Below, one piece after another: positions 36,728-59,210 of a stretch of DNA of 64,000 nucleotides. Position 1 is the stretch's first letter. Each line of letters opens with the position of its first letter. A program made the translations under genes and the position numbers. The DNA is from Diadema antillarum. Its lineage: Eukaryota. The notes under the pieces were generated by a model. It saw only the letters and a list, made by a program, of their open reading frames with translations, was not told where the DNA came from and did not search any database. The stretch is from assembly GCF_040938485.1 (NCBI RefSeq), contig NW_027271426.1, forward strand, positions 1,674,001 through 1,738,000. The letters are read 5' to 3'.

Positions 36728-36986
36728 GAGTTTTACTGTAGTGATTGCGTTACTACAGCTCGATCTGAAACTGAAAATGCTGTAAACTGAAGTTGTTCGA
36801 TTTACGTGATCTGGTTTTTATTTTTTTCAAAGAAATACTTGATAGATGTTTCACTTTACAAAAAAAAATCTTTTTAGTAGATTATGAGCGATTAATGATG
36901 ATTTTCATGGAAACTGAATTCTTGACTTGCTTCACCTTATCCCACTGTTTCATCCGTAGGGCAAAAACGAGAAACCTTCACATACC

Positions 36987-38093
36987 ATGGCACAGTACGA
37001 CAATGTACATGTAGATGTTGCAACGGAAGCGCAACTACTCGACTATGAGCTGACAGGCAGTGACAGTAATACCTTGACAGCTATAACCGTGACACGATCT
37101 TTCCCGTGGTCATGGAACGAAATGATGTGGTCCTGGTACGAGATCTGCGAGTTGGTTACCAGCATCCTCGGCATTTCTGGAAACCTCCTCGTGGTCATCG
37201 TCATCTTCTGTCGTCCATCGCGAGGCCGATCAACGGACATCCTTGTGGGAAACCTGGCGATCGCAGACTTTCTGACGTCGTTGTTCCTCCTTCCGTATCC
37301 TACGGTGAGGACCATGCCGATGTCGTTGGCGGGGTCGCTCTTCTGCAAGTTCATGCGCGGCGATTATTTCATGTGGACGTCGGTCACGGCGTCCATTTAC
37401 GGTCTGCTGACCGTATCGTTGGACCGGTTCCTGGCCGTCGTCTACCCGATCCGCTTCAAGAGGCTCGTCACTCGGGGACGGGTCTCCCTGGTCATCATGT
37501 CTGTGTGGATCTGGGCGGCCCTGTCCATGAGTCCGGTCCTCTTTATCAACAAGGTGGACGGCGCCACTGGAGACTGCATCTTTACCATGCCGAATCGAGA
37601 ACTGGACGTCACTTTCGGGCTGTACACCTTCGCCGTCCAGTTCGCCATCCCGACGGTTACCATGCTATGTTCACAGCTCGCCATCGTCCGATCCCTAAAC
37701 CGCGCCGCTACGAGGTTCAAGACCGGCGACGCCCAGAGGTCGACGGCGTCGTTCCACACAGCTGCCCGTGATCGAGTGCTAACTCTCACCTTTACCATCG
37801 TGCTGATCTACGTACTCTGCTGGTCACCTAACCAGATCGCTTTCCTCGCCTACAACCTCCGGATCATCCCGGCCACGTACCTCTACAGTCCTTTCAACCG
37901 AGTCTCGATCGCCATTGCCTTTTGCAATTCCTGCATCAACCCCTTTCTCTACACCCTCCGCCACCCTCGGTTCCGCGATGCGGTGCGATCGTTCTTTGGG
38001 GGAACCAGCACGAGTACCGCGCCCATCTTTGAGGAGCCAATGAGTCAGAAACCTCGTTCCACCCAAGATGTTTTCACCCTGGATGTTAAGTAG
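36987..38093 (+). CDS. Rhodopsin-like (class A) GPCR, 368 aa, single coding exon; galanin/allatostatin-A-receptor-like orphan
   Basis: Seven hydrophobic segments with class A motifs in order: GN (TM1), LAIAD (TM2), C3.25 in FCKF, DRF, W4.50, ECL2 Cys, FAIP (TM5), CWSP (TM6), NSCINPFLY (TM7) and helix 8 FRDAVRSFF. Preceded by a pyrimidine tract and TAG acceptor ending at 36959. Confidence 0.96.
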   Translation: MAQYDNVHVDVATEAQLLDYELTGSDSNTLTAITVTRSFPWSWNEMMWSWYEICELVTSILGISGNLLVVIVIFCRPSRGRSTDILVGNLAIADFLTSLFLLPYPTVRTMPMSLAGSLFCKFMRGDYFMWTSVTASIYGLLTVSLDRFLAVVYPIRFKRLVTRGRVSLVIMSVWIWAALSMSPVLFINKVDGATGDCIFTMPNRELDVTFGLYTFAVQFAIPTVTMLCSQLAIVRSLNRAATRFKTGDAQRSTASFHTAARDRVLTLTFTIVLIYVLCWSPNQIAFLAYNLRIIPATYLYSPFNRVSIAIAFCNSCINPFLYTLRHPRFRDAVRSFFGGTSTSTAPIFEEPMSQKPRSTQDVFTLDVK

Positions 38094-53952: not shown

Positions 53953-54103
53953 ATGGCGTGTCCATCAAGAGTCACCCCCGATCTCTCCTCGGAGGCAAAA
54001 GATGGGGAGAAGGAATTCAAGGGAGACGAGAAGTTGGGCAAGAAGATGGCTTACCTCCTCAGATATGGAGCCATGAAGGAAGGGCTGTCGGTGAGAGAGG
54101 GAG
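53953..54103 (+). CDS. Tpt1-N/LRR fusion gene, coding exon 1 (MACPSR...DEKLGKKMAYLLRYGAMKEGLSVREG)
   Basis: Acceptor cacag ends at 53942, ATG at 53953, donor GAG|GTGAGT at 54104 (phase 1). The peptide resembles the Tpt1/KptA N-terminal 'LSKxxSxxLRHGAxxxGL' motif. Confidence 0.9.
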
Positions 54104-54988
54104 GTGAGTATTGCAAATATCTGTGGCAGGTACTGATTTAGTTGATCAAGAATTCTTCAAGAAGGCCATTTACCATTGAGATCGTGAAGCAGTTCAACAT
54201 GATTTAGTTTTCAAACAAGCCAACAAAATTTACTACAGTATCCTACAAATGATTTTCTTATCCAGATAAGTTGTTGACATTGAACTAAATTACTTTAACC
54301 AAGATGATAAATGTGTTGACATCAGTTCATAAAACTTTGTTTGCTTGTGTGTTTGTTTGTTTGTTTGTTTGTTTGTTTGTTTGTTTGTTGTAGTTTTTTT
54401 GCTGATATTACATCATAGTGAAATTATATTACACCAGATATAGGCCCATAGCATAAAATCCTTAGTGAAAGAAATCGTGTGTGTGGCTGTCTTCGGCACT
54501 GCTGCTTGACCAAAGTCAGGAAAGAAGGAAGTAGTGTTTTTTTCCTTTCTAATGTGATTATTTATGCGTGTACGAGGGTGAGAGTTCCTTTTGTATCCCC
54601 CCTGCCCAAATCTAAAAGAGAGAGAGAAAAAAAAACTACAACGTATCATACATGGCAGGAAATAATATTTCCAAGTGTGAAGAGTGAGAAAGTTGAAAAA
54701 ATTTGATTGGGTGTTGGATTCTTGGGTCCTAGAATTACAGTAAGGCTTTAAAGGGTCAGGGTCATTTATGGGGGGGGGGGGGGGGGGGAGGTGCTAAAGT
54801 AACTCTTTATATATATACAAGCATACATGCATGTACACATACAGACATATGTGTGTGCTCAGTATGTCTCAGATTACTTTATATACTGCACATTATCAGA
54901 GTGGACGCTAAGATACAACATTGCAATGTGCAGAAGTTGGTTAGACATTGATTACGACTAGCTATAACCATCATCTTCTTGTTCTCAG

Positions 54989-55164
54989 GTTTTGTCAAGC
55001 TGGCGGATTTGATGGAGGTTCCCATGCTGTCACGCTTCTCCGTGGAGGACGTGCTAAAGGAGGTCAAAGGGTCATTGTCCTACCAGGGCAAGAGGCGATT
55101 TGAGTACAAGAGGGAACACAACGAGGTCTTTGTCCGTGCCGCGTACTCCCGGAGACTTGAAAGG
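54989..55164 (+). CDS. Tpt1-N/LRR fusion gene, coding exon 2 (GFVKLADLMEVPML...QGKRRFEY...VFVRAAYSRRLER)
   Basis: Acceptor ttctcag ends at 54988 and the phase-1 join gives GGT (Gly). Donor AGG|GTAAGC at 55165 (phase 0). Matches the Tpt1 'GFV..L', 'KxRF' and 'IRA' motifs. Confidence 0.9.
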
Positions 55165-55193
55165 GTAAGCTTCCCTCACTCAGGGGGAGATGG

Positions 55194-55286
55194 TTAACCC
55201 GTTGAGGATGAGCTGATTTTGCTATAACCCAGGTTTCCCATAGACACCTGCCCGAGTACACTAAGGACTAGTCTTCAACGGGTTAA
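55194..55286. mobile_element. 93-bp piggyBac-like MITE, copy 1 (intron 2)
   Basis: TTAA-CCCGTTGAGGA ... TCTTCAACGGG-TTAA. Confidence 0.85.
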
Positions 55287-56365
55287 GAGATGTGGGATTA
55301 TAATATGCTTCTTTTTCTGTCTGTCTATCTGTCATGGCATACATTCACTTTAGTAGGGACAACCTTTGCCAGGCTTCACTTGGCAGTGCATTGTGGGAAG
55401 GTTCCTTTGTTTTAACATTGTATAAACATTGTCCTGTGACAAATTGTTTTGTGACCCTGTCTTTTGTATAGTGCTTGATCAGAAGGAATACAGTTGAAGT
55501 CTTTGTATTGATTGCTTCTACTTTGCAGAGTCACTCAACAATGCTTAGAATTTTACAAGGAAATTATTTCTCTGATGTAAAAAAAAATGATAATAAAAAT
55601 GATATGTTCACCTGATGAAAGGCAGAGGTGCATCTTCACATCTGTCTCAAAATAAATTTTTGGGACATTGCCTGCTGCAATCACACATTGCTTTGTTCAT
55701 TTTGCATGACAATACACTAACAGACCTTTTTGGGTCACTTAGGATACAATTCACAGATGTCATGTGATGGTAGATTCATTGCCTTCTTTCACCTTAGTGA
55801 TGAAACTAGTGGTGGCGTCTCAAATTTCAGCCAAACGGGATGTGTGATTTCATTGCTTGATTCTGCAATCAAATTTTAGATTCGACGTGGCAAAGATCAG
55901 GATGCAAATGTCACAAAATTTATTTTCTTTAAACATGCACACACACCCCCAACACACACAGAAAAGATATGAAAAGAATTTGTAGATTTCTTACATTCTG
56001 GATATGAGATGAATTTGAAAGTATAAGAGGGCAAGCAAATAAAGATGTAATACAGGTGACTCCCATAATAGCAAGGTCCTCGGGGCGGGATGGTTTATTT
56101 TGTTGTATCAAAACTTTGTTATAGCCAAACATTGAGCTATATAGTTTATAATCATGGTACAACTGTAGATAAATATGGTTGGACCTGAATTTTTGCTTTG
56201 TTGTATTTAAACGAAAGTTTCAGTGTAACTATGTGTTTGTTATAATGAGAGTGAATTGTATGTCGAGTGATTGTCAATTCTGTCCAGCCTGAATCTCTAT
56301 GTAGGAATCTTTCAAGCAGTCTTTAATATCAACCCCCATTTCTGCCCCTATTTATGGTCTTACAG

Positions 56366-56481
56366 AACCCTTACCATGAGGGCACCAGGGTGCCCCGTCT
56401 TCTGGAGCAGTGCCAGGACCAGATTTGCCTGAACATCAAGGACTACTGTCTGGAGGACTGTCCTGATGAATTTCTCATTGG
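56366..56481 (+). CDS. Tpt1-N/LRR fusion gene, coding exon 3 (NPYHEGTRVPRLLEQCQDQICLNIKDYCLEDCPDEFLI)
   Basis: Acceptor tcttacag ends at 56365 (phase 0), donor GG|GTAAAT at 56482 (phase 2). Too short to appear in the ORF track. Resembles the AMN1-like N-terminal 'LLxxC' segment. Confidence 0.85.
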
Positions 56482-56901
56482 GTAAATTTCATTTCATTTT
56501 ATTTTATTTCACATATTTATTTTCATTGTCAATGAAAAAAAATTACAAATCATATCATGCTTATAAAAAATAACAATCAATTTACATATTCTGCATACAT
56601 TTATGCCAAAATATATTACTGCATAATCACAACACAATACAAGTGTTTTGTCAATGATTTTCACTGACAAATGTGCTCGCAGCCAATCAGATGCAAGAAT
56701 TTTAGGAGCTTAAAACAGTTATCAATGACTGACAAGTTTCATGAAATGCTGCCCTTATGCGTACTTTACCATAATTATTGTTTTGGGAGGTTAAAATGGA
56801 GCTGTTTTCATATTCTTTATAACAAAAACCAACTTTGTATGGCAGTGATAATTGAGATGATGGAGTTAAGAGTGGGGTTTTTTTGTGCTTTATGTCCTCA
56901 G

Positions 56902-57118
56902 TGAGCTCCTCCACAGGCTGAAGCGGAAAGGAAAGCTGACGAACAGAGCGCTGGAAAATCTCCTGGGTCCCAACATCCAGACACTCAACCTAGGGGGCGC
57001 CCTTGTCACGCAGAGCGCACCCAAGATAATCGTCCGGCAGTGCCCCAACCTCATGCACCTCAGCCTGAAGGATTGTGGGTATCTTGTCACCGACCATGTC
57101 CTCATCTACCTCATGAAG
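56902..57118 (+). CDS. Tpt1-N/LRR fusion gene, coding exon 4 (ELLHRLKRKGKLTNRALENLLGPNIQTLNL...CPNLMHLSLKDCGYLVTDHVLIYLMK)
   Basis: Acceptor tcctcag ends at 56901 and the phase-2 join gives GGT. Donor AAG|GTTTGT at 57119 (phase 0). Contains two cysteine-containing-type LRRs. Confidence 0.88.
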
Positions 57119-57594
57119 GTTTGTGCCAAAATAGGTTTTTAAGTTTTGGTGGGGCTGGGGGAGGGAGCATTGACCTTTGACCCCACAAACCATGAGCCTC
57201 TTCCCCTGTCCTTGAAAATGACTGCTTTGTTCAGTGAGTAGAGGCTCAAGTGTTGAATATGGAGGACTGACAATATTAGTTACCCCTGCTTGTTCACTTA
57301 ACATGAGAAATATCTACAGTCTGATGCCATATTCTGGTCTGGTGCCAGAGGCCGAATGGAATATGGCACCAAACTGCAGATATGTCCCATATGACATGAG
57401 AACAAGCAGAGCACAATGATTTTATCTTTTATTATAATCTCATCGATAAATTTTTGATGAAAATATGTTAGACCCATAATTCATATTTCAGATATTTTTG
57501 TCTACCTACCACTTGTGCTTTCTTCTCTTTCTTTCCTATAATAAACTAACTACTGCATGCATGTACTGTTAGATAGTACATGTAGTACTAGATT

Positions 57595-57675
57595 TTAACC
57601 CGTTGAGGACAAGTCCCGATCGAGCGTACCCGGGCAAGTGTCTATGGGAAATGCGTGATGTAGCAAAAGCAGCAT
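57595..57675. mobile_element. piggyBac-like MITE, copy 2 (intron 4, truncated, opposite orientation)
   Basis: TTAA-CCCGTTGAGGACAAGTC...GGGCAAGTGTCTATGGGAAA; no right TIR. Confidence 0.7.
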
Positions 57676-58395
57676 GAACAATGCAAAAAATACAATGGGG
57701 ACAATCTGGCCCTCATTCACGTAATATGGGATATATTGCATGGTTGATTGACCACACAGATTACAGAATTCACCATCACTAAAAGATAAACTATCATGTC
57801 TTGGTACGGTTGAAGGCTTGGTGGAAGAACAGCTCAGCCTATTTATGTGTTGATGTTGTCATTGCAGGTGATACAAGTTACGGGGAATGAGAATGCCTCT
57901 ACTGTAGATTTAAACAAAAAAAGGGGGTTGAGATTAACTCATCAAATAACATAATTGCAAGCATATTGTAAACTATATTTTTTTACATCAATATTGATTC
58001 CACAGATATGATTCATTGCTCTTGAGGAAATTTTTTCAAAGATTTGCATGCAAATGAGAGACATGTAAGGCCACGACATCATCGTATCATCCGATTTGCG
58101 TGATTGATCTTGGCCATTTTTAACTAGTGTGGGAAAGCACTAGAACCTTTGTGATTTAAGAATGTTCTTTTTTGTCACTGATGTTTGAGTAACTTTTCCC
58201 ATTCTATTCATTACTTCAAATTCAATCATTAAAGCAATGGAAAATGTGAGTTGACTTTACCTCTTTCTATGCCAAGGATTTTGGACAGTGTGTACAATTC
58301 TGTGTGGGTTTTGTGCCAATTGGCACTGAAAGCTCACTAAGGGTTAATAAACCATCACCAAAACAAAGTTTCTGAAACTTTTATTATCGCCACAG

Positions 58396-58701
58396 AGACT
58401 GCCCCACCTGAAGAGCCTCAACCTGTGCAGCTGCAGCCACCTCACCACCACCTCCCTGCATGTCATTCCCAGGCACCTGCCACACCTGGAGGTCCTGGAC
58501 GTGTCGTGGGTGAGTGGCCTGACCGAGCGGGACATCCTGGCGGTCCTCGAGGGATGCCCCAGCCTCCGGAAGCTGCTCCTCCTGGCGGTCAAGCTCACCT
58601 TGTCCGAGGACACCTGCGTGAAGATGGCGACATTGTGCGCTGAGAGGGGGTTAAAGGTCACCTACTGCAAACAGGATGTGACGATGGTCAACGGCAGTTG
58701 A
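58396..58701 (+). CDS. Tpt1-N/LRR fusion gene, coding exon 5 (RLPHLKSLNLCSCSHLT...PHLEVLDVSW...PSLRKLLL...MVNGS*)
   Basis: Acceptor cacag ends at 58395 (phase 0). Three LRRs, then TGA at 58699-58701. Total CDS 151+176+116+217+306 = 966 nt, giving 321 aa. Confidence 0.9.
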   Translation, partial: RLPHLKSLNLCSCSHLTTTSLHVIPRHLPHLEVLDVSWVSGLTERDILAVLEGCPSLRKLLLLAVKLTLSEDTCVKMATLCAERGLKVTYCKQDVTMVNGS

Positions 58702-59117: not shown

Positions 59118-59210
59118 TTAACCCATTGAAAACTAGTCTCAGGTATACTTGGGCAGGTGTCTATGGGAAACACATGTTATAGCAATATCAGCCTGTCCTC
59201 AATGGGTTAA
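59118..59210. mobile_element. 93-bp piggyBac-like MITE, copy 3 (downstream of the stop codon)
   Basis: TTAA-CCCATTGAAAACTAGTC ... GTCCTCAATGGG-TTAA. Confidence 0.85.

What the first reader, a model, noticed from the sequence alone, without database searches (positions are those of the whole stretch)
54046..55164. Tpt1-like lobe keeps the phosphate-binding basic residues but loses catalytic features (pseudo-enzyme)
Seen: LLRY (R37, Y38), GKRRF (K85, R87) and VRAAYSRR (R100). Established: Tpt1 catalysis needs an Arg-His-Arg-Arg tetrad; the first Arg-His lies in LRH, the second Arg in KxRF, and the last Arg in the NAD+ lobe. Inference: both N-lobe arginines and the lysine are kept, His is replaced by Tyr, the QGHS linker is lost and the fourth Arg is missing with the NAD+ lobe. 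This is the pattern expected of a retained phosphate-binding pocket without transferase activity.
Basis: partly seen in the sequence, partly recalled or inferred. Interest (0 to 1): 0.7.

Follow-up and report, generated by a model that had tools for sequence, protein, structure and literature searches.

The report
Enzyme-less Tpt1 RNA lobe on LRR protein
A sea-urchin gene keeps only the RNA-gripping half of the RNA 2'-phosphotransferase Tpt1, with its two phosphate-clamping arginines conserved across at least six animal phyla. It has no NAD+ catalytic half and is joined to ubiquitin-ligase-type leucine-rich repeats, so it is probably an RNA-phosphate reader, not an enzyme.

Summary

Homology to the Tpt1/TRPT1 RNA lobe is solid:
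- Pfam PF01885, E 3e-12, on the 93-98% identical Diadema setosum protein, covering profile positions 3-83 of 177 only.
- A profile of 21 lobes hits only Tpt1 chains in the PDB.
- The AlphaFold model matches mouse and human TRPT1 (TM 0.73-0.76).

No NAD+ lobe exists in the protein or anywhere in the 64 kb.

The gene belongs to an uncharacterised family found in echinoderms, hemichordates, amphioxus, annelids, molluscs and rotifers. Conservation across relatives:
- R37 28/28, R100 48/48, R87 45/50.
- Tyr replaces the tetrad His in 27/28.
- K85 is not conserved (4/50).
- The lobe has dN/dS 0.03 against D. setosum.

A non-catalytic lobe with a conserved phosphate/RNA site is well supported by sequence. 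Binding itself is untested, and "pseudo-enzyme" is loose because the catalytic domain is absent, not dead. The C-terminal part is an FBXL/Rad7-type LRR.

The scan noted the same gene on this same window (s1-215025), not on other DNA. Novelty: new variant of a known kind. Interest is moderate.

The parts
53953..54103 (+). Coding exon 1 (residues 1-50 plus the first base of G51). It encodes a low-confidence N-terminal tail and helix 1 of the Tpt1-like RNA lobe, with G29, K30, Y34, R37 (54061-54063) and Y38 (54064-54066).
   Evidence: ATG, open frame and GT donor. PF01885 profile 3-27, E 0.034. tblastn with fungal Tpt1, E 2e-5. Aligns to residues 1-49 of P0045 at 94% identity.
54104..54988 (+). 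Intron 1 (GT...AG). It contains a (GTTT)n microsatellite and a poly-G run.
   Evidence: Sequence. It is absent from orthologous proteins and from the echinoid cDNA contigs.
54989..55164 (+). Coding exon 2 (residues 51-109), the rest of the RNA lobe. Key codons: K85 55090-55092, R86, R87 55096-55098, R100 55135-55137, Y103 55144-55146, then S104-R105-R106 in place of G-H-S.
   Evidence: AG acceptor, GT donor, phase 0 end. PF01885 profile 30-81, E 0.066. phmmer found 30 relatives at E<=1e-3. 98% identical to P0045 residues 51-108.
56366..56481 (+). Coding exon 3: linker plus a conserved helix with a BC-box-like pattern, L-x3-C-x3-I.
   Evidence: Splice sites. Tiles onto relatives. The motif is present in 16/21 relatives with Cys, and in 21/21 with a small residue at that position.
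56902..57118 (+). Coding exon 4: cap helices and the first leucine-rich repeats.
   Evidence: Splice sites. Alignment. LRR fold in the model of P0045.
58396..58701 (+). Coding exon 5: the remaining leucine-rich repeats and the stop codon (58699-58701).
   Evidence: AG acceptor in phase 0 with exon 4. Alignment. Pfam LRR families on P0045.

Best explanation
The stretch encodes the N-terminal domain of a 321-aa sea-urchin protein. This domain descends from the winged-helix RNA lobe of eukaryotic Tpt1/TRPT1. The NAD+-binding ADP-ribosyltransferase lobe is absent, so the protein cannot carry out 2'-phosphate transfer or ADP-ribosylation by itself (shown by sequence).

The lobe keeps most of the side chains that hold the junction nucleotide and its 2'/3' phosphates, or a 5' phosphate, in solved Tpt1 structures. 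The equivalents are K30, Y34, R37, R87 and Y103, with Tyr in place of the tetrad His.

The most likely function (inferred) is non-catalytic recognition of a phosphorylated nucleotide or RNA feature. This would bring an FBXL/Rad7-type leucine-rich-repeat domain to that RNA or RNP. That domain may work as a cullin-RING substrate adaptor through the BC-box-like helix, which is a weaker inference.
For: Homology to the Tpt1 RNA lobe:
- PF01885 at E 1e-8 to 1.5e-12 (36-48 bits, cut-off 26) on six full-length relatives, and 3.4e-12 on P0045, always profile positions 2-83 of 177.
- A profile of 21 lobes against the PDB returns 13 hits, all Tpt1/TRPT1/KptA, best 7yw2_A at 2.4e-9.

No NAD+ lobe:
- tblastn with seven true Tpt1s, and an HMM of their C-lobes, find nothing in the 64 kb beyond exon 1.

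Residue mapping to C. thermocellum Tpt1:
- K30=K11, Y34=Y15, R37=R18, Y38=H19, K85=K66, R87=R68, Y103=Y80.

Conservation:
- R37 28/28, Y34 27/27, Y38 27/28, K30 25/27, R87 45/50, R100 48/48, aromatic at 103 in 48/48.
- These rank 1, 4, 8, 15, 17 and 6 of 86 columns (aromatic 103 not ranked here).

Selection:
- 16 synonymous against 2 non-synonymous differences in the lobe versus D. setosum, dN/dS 0.03. The rest of the gene has 0.13.

Published basis:
- The tetrad and the lobe boundary (PMC6333775).
- The 2'-PO4 and the 5'-PO4 are held by the same residues, and nearly all RNA contacts come from the RNA lobe (PMC12170183).
- NADP+, a 2'-PO4 mimic, binds the N-lobe alone and independently of the C-lobe (PMC8464070).

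LRR part:
Against: - No binding experiment exists.
- In Tpt1 the phosphate pocket is completed by arginines of the NAD+ lobe, which are missing here. The N-lobe alone bound a mononucleotide mimic only weakly (KD about 1 mM, PMC8464070).
- K85 is not conserved, and Patiria has Gln at R87.
- Conserved arginines could serve a different ligand.
- No F-box or SOCS-box Pfam match was found, so the ubiquitin-ligase link rests on fold type and a short motif.
- No RNA run was listed for this genome. Expression is shown only for orthologues.
Confidence: 0.6

Rival explanations
1. The lobe is a repurposed winged helix with no phosphate or RNA specificity. It would act as a protein-protein interaction or structural domain, and its conserved arginines would serve folding or another acidic ligand such as a phosphoprotein, inositol phosphate or poly(ADP-ribose).
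For: - Winged helices are versatile. After the Tpt1 chains, the next structural matches are La motifs, forkhead domains and bacterial repressors.
- K85 is not conserved and GHS is replaced.
- The pocket lacks its NAD+-lobe half.
Against: - The conserved residues are specifically those that contact the junction nucleotide and its phosphates in Tpt1 (K30, Y34, R37, R87, aromatic 103). They rank among the most conserved columns.
- Sequence identity to TRPT1 is 34-36% over the lobe, far above that of generic winged helices.
Confidence: 0.22
2. The lobe is half of a split enzyme. It would work in trans with a separately encoded NAD+ lobe or with canonical TRPT1, so the complex would still be catalytic.
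For: The two lobes of Tpt1 fold and bind their ligands independently (PMC8464070).
Against: - No NAD+ lobe is encoded in the 64 kb.
- The His of the tetrad is Tyr and the G-H-S hinge is replaced.
- The lobe is covalently continued by a linker and an LRR domain in all relatives.
- No stand-alone NAD+ lobe is known to me (own knowledge).
Confidence: 0.05
3. The gene model is an artefact or a decaying pseudogene, and the Tpt1-like residues are relics.
For: No RNA run was listed for this genome.
Against: - All five exons have intact frames and canonical splice sites.
- dN/dS is 0.03-0.13 against dS 0.24.
- The same architecture occurs in six phyla.
- An echinoid orthologue is found as spliced mRNA in three runs.
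Confidence: 0.02

Closest known systems
Tpt1 / TRPT1 / KptA RNA 2'-phosphotransferase (Pfam PF01885; PDB 7yw2, 7yw3, 6e3a, 8tg5)
   Same: The N-terminal winged-helix RNA lobe is shared, at 34-36% identity to mouse and human TRPT1 and rmsd 1.4-2.0 A. The first two tetrad arginines are kept, along with the Lys, Tyr and aromatic residues that contact the junction nucleotide and phosphate.
   Different: - There is no NAD+ lobe and no fourth Arg.
- The tetrad His is Tyr, and G-H-S is replaced by (G/S)-R-R.
- The lobe is followed by a linker and an LRR domain.
- It therefore cannot be a 2'-phosphotransferase, although UniRef auto-names the relatives that way.
FBXL / Rad7 / Skp2-type LRR substrate receptors of cullin-RING ligases, including KDM2A/B and FBXL19, which carry a nucleic-acid-binding domain ahead of the LRR
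   Different: No F-box or SOCS-box is detected by Pfam. Only a short BC-box-like pattern is present. No partner is known.
La motif and other RNA-binding winged helices
   Different: La lacks the Tpt1 phosphate-binding residues (PMC6333775). Identity to the La motif hits listed is only 13-17%.

Membership tests
Tpt1/KptA RNA 2'-phosphotransferase (PF01885) | N-terminal RNA lobe (winged helix, about profile positions 1-85) | tested here: met
   PF01885 at 36-48 bits, above the cut-off of 26, on seven full-length relatives including the 93-98% identical P0045. Only Tpt1 hits in the PDB profile search. TM 0.73-0.76 to TRPT1.
Tpt1/KptA RNA 2'-phosphotransferase (PF01885) | C-terminal NAD+ lobe (ADP-ribosyltransferase fold, about profile positions 86-177) | tested here: not met
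   Pfam matches stop at profile position 83. The sequence continues into a linker and LRRs. There is no C-lobe signal in the 64 kb.
Tpt1/KptA RNA 2'-phosphotransferase (PF01885) | Arg-His-Arg-Arg catalytic tetrad (PMC6333775, PMC6097658) | tested here: not met
   R37 and R87 are present. His is replaced by Y38 in 27/28 relatives. The fourth Arg is absent along with the NAD+ lobe.
Tpt1/KptA RNA 2'-phosphotransferase (PF01885) | NAD+-dependent removal of RNA 2'-PO4, or complementation of yeast tpt1-delta | not testable with these tools
   This needs a biochemical or genetic assay.
F-box/LRR (FBXL) or BC-box LRR substrate receptors | LRR solenoid of the FBXL/Rad7 type | tested here: met
F-box/LRR (FBXL) or BC-box LRR substrate receptors | F-box or SOCS/BC-box that binds Skp1 or Elongin C | tested here: inconclusive
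   No F-box or SOCS-box Pfam hit at E<=0.1. The pattern L-x3-C-x3-[AILV] is present in the window and in 16/21 relatives. Binding was not tested.
Pseudoenzyme (strict sense: catalytic-domain fold kept, catalytic residues lost) | Retention of the catalytic domain fold | tested here: not met
   The catalytic NAD+ lobe is absent. Only the substrate-binding lobe is retained.

The most novel reading that the evidence does not exclude
The family is a natural, non-catalytic reader of an RNA phosphate mark: an internal 2'-phosphate, a 5'-monophosphate end, or a phospho-ADP-ribosylated end. It would couple that mark to an Elongin-BC/cullin-type ubiquitin ligase through its BC-box-like helix and LRR domain. 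This would be an RNA-mark-directed E3 adaptor conserved in invertebrate bilaterians. No vertebrate or ecdysozoan member was listed in the searches run here.
Probability: 0.15. Interest if true: 0.8.

Novelty: new variant of a known kind. Interest (0 to 1): 0.55.

Why it matters
- **A candidate reader.** Internal RNA 2'-phosphates and phospho-ADP-ribosylated nucleic-acid ends are known mainly through the enzymes that write or erase them. No dedicated reader is known to me. A Tpt1 RNA lobe that has kept its phosphate-clamping residues without any catalytic partner, across at least six phyla, is a plausible reader.
- **A possible tool and pathway.** If it binds such marks, it could serve as an affinity tool. 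It could also point to an RNA-linked protein-turnover pathway in marine invertebrates.
- **An annotation fix.** The relatives are auto-named '2'-phosphotransferase' in UniRef, and they cannot have that activity.

Tried and rejected
- phmmer of exon 2 alone against the PDB gave only chance hits. The family profile was needed.
- The look-up of sequencing runs listed no RNA run for the last exon. Read laying could therefore not be used, and the junctions in this species rest on splice signals and orthologues.
- A search for an NAD+ lobe elsewhere in the window found nothing.
- Literature searches for a Tpt1-lobe plus LRR family, for Tpt1 pseudoenzymes, and for PF01885 / Tpt1-like / TRPT1-like terms found no description of this family.
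- The pseudogene or artefact reading was rejected on dN/dS and cross-phylum conservation.
- A search of the scan's notes for a canonical TRPT1 in this genome found none. Whether a true TRPT1 coexists in this species was not established.

Full report
**What is there.** The window is AT-rich animal DNA. On the + strand a five-exon gene runs from 53953 to 58701:
- exon 1, 53953-54103
- exon 2, 54989-55164
- exon 3, 56366-56481
- exon 4, 56902-57118
- exon 5, 58396-58701, including the stop

All junctions are GT...AG and keep the frame, giving 321 codons. The finding covers exons 1-2.

The five exon translations, kept as separate rows, tile full-length relatives collinearly without gaps. The nearest relative is an annotated 320-aa 'uncharacterized protein' of the sea urchin Diadema setosum (P0045), 93-98% identical per exon. 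Its locus is collinear with the window at 80-84% DNA identity. The window therefore comes from a related diadematoid urchin.

P0045 served as the contiguous stand-in.

**Is it a Tpt1 lobe?** Yes.
- Each exon alone gives a weak but collinear PF01885 match.
- The contiguous orthologues score 36-48 bits against a cut-off of 26, E down to 1.5e-12. The match always covers profile positions 2-83 of 177.
- A profile of 21 lobes searched against all PDB sequences returns 13 hits. Every one is a Tpt1/TRPT1/KptA, the best being mouse TRPT1 at 2.4e-9.
- An AlphaFold model of the lobe (pLDDT 87) has Tpt1 structures as its top 21 Foldseek matches. Human 7yw3 has TMq 0.73. Mouse 7yw2 has TMq 0.76, rmsd 1.4 A and 36% identity. 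La motifs and other winged helices follow only after these.

**What is missing.** Published work places the boundary between the RNA lobe and the NAD+ lobe at residue 85 of C. thermocellum Tpt1. The essential tetrad there is Arg18, His19, Arg68 and Arg121, and the last of these lies in the NAD+ lobe (PMC6333775; PMC6097658). In the window protein the sequence after R109 runs into a linker and leucine-rich repeats. Seven genuine Tpt1 proteins, and an HMM of their NAD+ lobes, find nothing else in the 64 kb. The protein therefore cannot bind NAD+ in the Tpt1 manner and lacks the fourth Arg.

**Residue mapping and conservation.** The HMMER alignment to 6e3a gives these equivalences:

| Window | C. 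thermocellum Tpt1 |
|---|---|
| G29 / K30 | Ser10 / Lys11 |
| Y34 | Tyr15 |
| R37 | Arg18 |
| Y38 | His19 |
| K85 | Lys66 |
| R87 | Arg68 |
| R100 | Arg77 |
| Y103 | Tyr80 |
| S104-R105-R106 | Gly81-His82-Ser83 |

In the P. horikoshii Tpt1 complex with 2'-PO4 RNA, the counterparts of these residues make nearly all RNA contacts. They are Ser6, Lys7, Tyr11, Arg14, His15, Lys60, Arg62 and Tyr74. The same set holds a 5'-PO4 (PMC12170183).

Counts across up to 50 relatives and fragments are below. These count sequences, not independent events.

| Position | Conservation |
|---|---|
| R37 | 28/28 |
| Y34 | 27/27 |
| Y38 | 27/28 (His only in Dimorphilus) |
| K30 | 25/27 |
| R87 | 45/50 (Gln in Patiria) |
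| R100 | 48/48 |
| 103 | Y or F in 48/48 |
| R105 | Arg in 42/48 |
| K85 | Lys in only 4/50 |
| R86 column | K/R in 32/50 |

Two points follow. The two tetrad arginines are among the best-conserved columns, while the lysine is not. Also, Lys66 is reported as non-essential in Tpt1 (PMC6333775).

The QGHS element is remodelled to Y/F-(G/S)-R-R, not deleted. The conserved Arg in place of the His is unexplained. It might substitute for the missing NAD+-lobe arginine, but that is speculation.

**Selection and expression.** Against the D. setosum locus, the lobe exons show 16 synonymous and 2 non-synonymous differences (dS 0.27, dN/dS 0.03). Exons 3-5 give 0.13. No RNA run was listed for this genome. 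An echinoid orthologue (P0044) is one uninterrupted ORF on 1.2-1.3 kb contigs in three separate runs, which means spliced mRNA with the same lobe-plus-LRR architecture.

**Family and context.** Full-length relatives (E below 1e-90) occur in several groups:
- three Branchiostoma species
- echinoderms of four classes (Patiria, Acanthaster, Amphiura, Apostichopus, Diadema)
- Saccoglossus
- the annelids Capitella and Dimorphilus
- the molluscs Lottia and Liolophura
- bdelloid rotifers

No vertebrate, arthropod or nematode member was listed. All members are 'uncharacterized' or auto-named '2'-phosphotransferase'.

**Mechanism.**
- Shown: the homology, the absence of the catalytic lobe, the conservation pattern, and purifying selection.
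- Inferred: the lobe still recognises a phosphorylated nucleotide in RNA. This fits the finding that the Tpt1 N-lobe binds NADP+ on its own, though weakly, at about 1 mM (PMC8464070).
- Weaker inference: the LRR part links this recognition to protein interactions, possibly within a cullin-RING ligase.

**Verdict.** I found no paper describing the family. I rate it a new variant of a known kind, with moderate interest.

Noticed in passing
window 36960-38090 (+): An open stretch of 377 codons without introns encodes a rhodopsin-family GPCR (Pfam 7tm_1, E 4e-42).
   Followed up: partly
window 55193-55288, 57595-57673 (inverted), 59118-59210 (inverted): Three copies of a short interspersed repeat of about 90 bp, 77-82% alike, lie in introns 2 and 4 and the 3' flank. 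The repeat is also present in several places in the D. setosum locus.
   Followed up: partly
window 55147-55152 (R105, R106): In the family, the His and Ser of the Tpt1 G-H-S hinge are replaced by conserved basic residues (Arg in 42/48, Arg or Lys in 37/48). This may compensate for the missing NAD+-lobe arginine. It remains unexplained.
   Followed up: partly
P0014 (Dimorphilus gyrociliatus): This is the only relative that has His at the tetrad position (L-R-H instead of L-R-Y). It is probably a reversion, since the other annelid, Capitella, has Tyr.
   Followed up: no
P0018 (Branchiostoma floridae x B. japonicum, 487 aa): This model carries about four tandem copies of the cap-helix and first-LRR segment, unlike the 315-aa B. 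floridae protein. It could be a real duplication or an assembly or annotation artefact.
   Followed up: no
relatives P0014, P0015, P0016, P0027, P0047, P0049, P0050: UniRef names these proteins '2'-phosphotransferase', although they lack the NAD+ lobe. This is a likely over-annotation propagated from the PF01885 match.
   Followed up: yes
window 56366-56481: A BC-box-like pattern, L-x3-C-x3-I, sits on a conserved helix between the lobe and the LRRs (16/21 relatives with Cys). The best structural neighbour of the LRR part is Rad7 from its complex with Elongin C.
   Followed up: partly
window 54340-54392 and 54773-54793: Intron 1 contains a (GTTT)n microsatellite and a G run of about 20 bases.
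   Followed up: no
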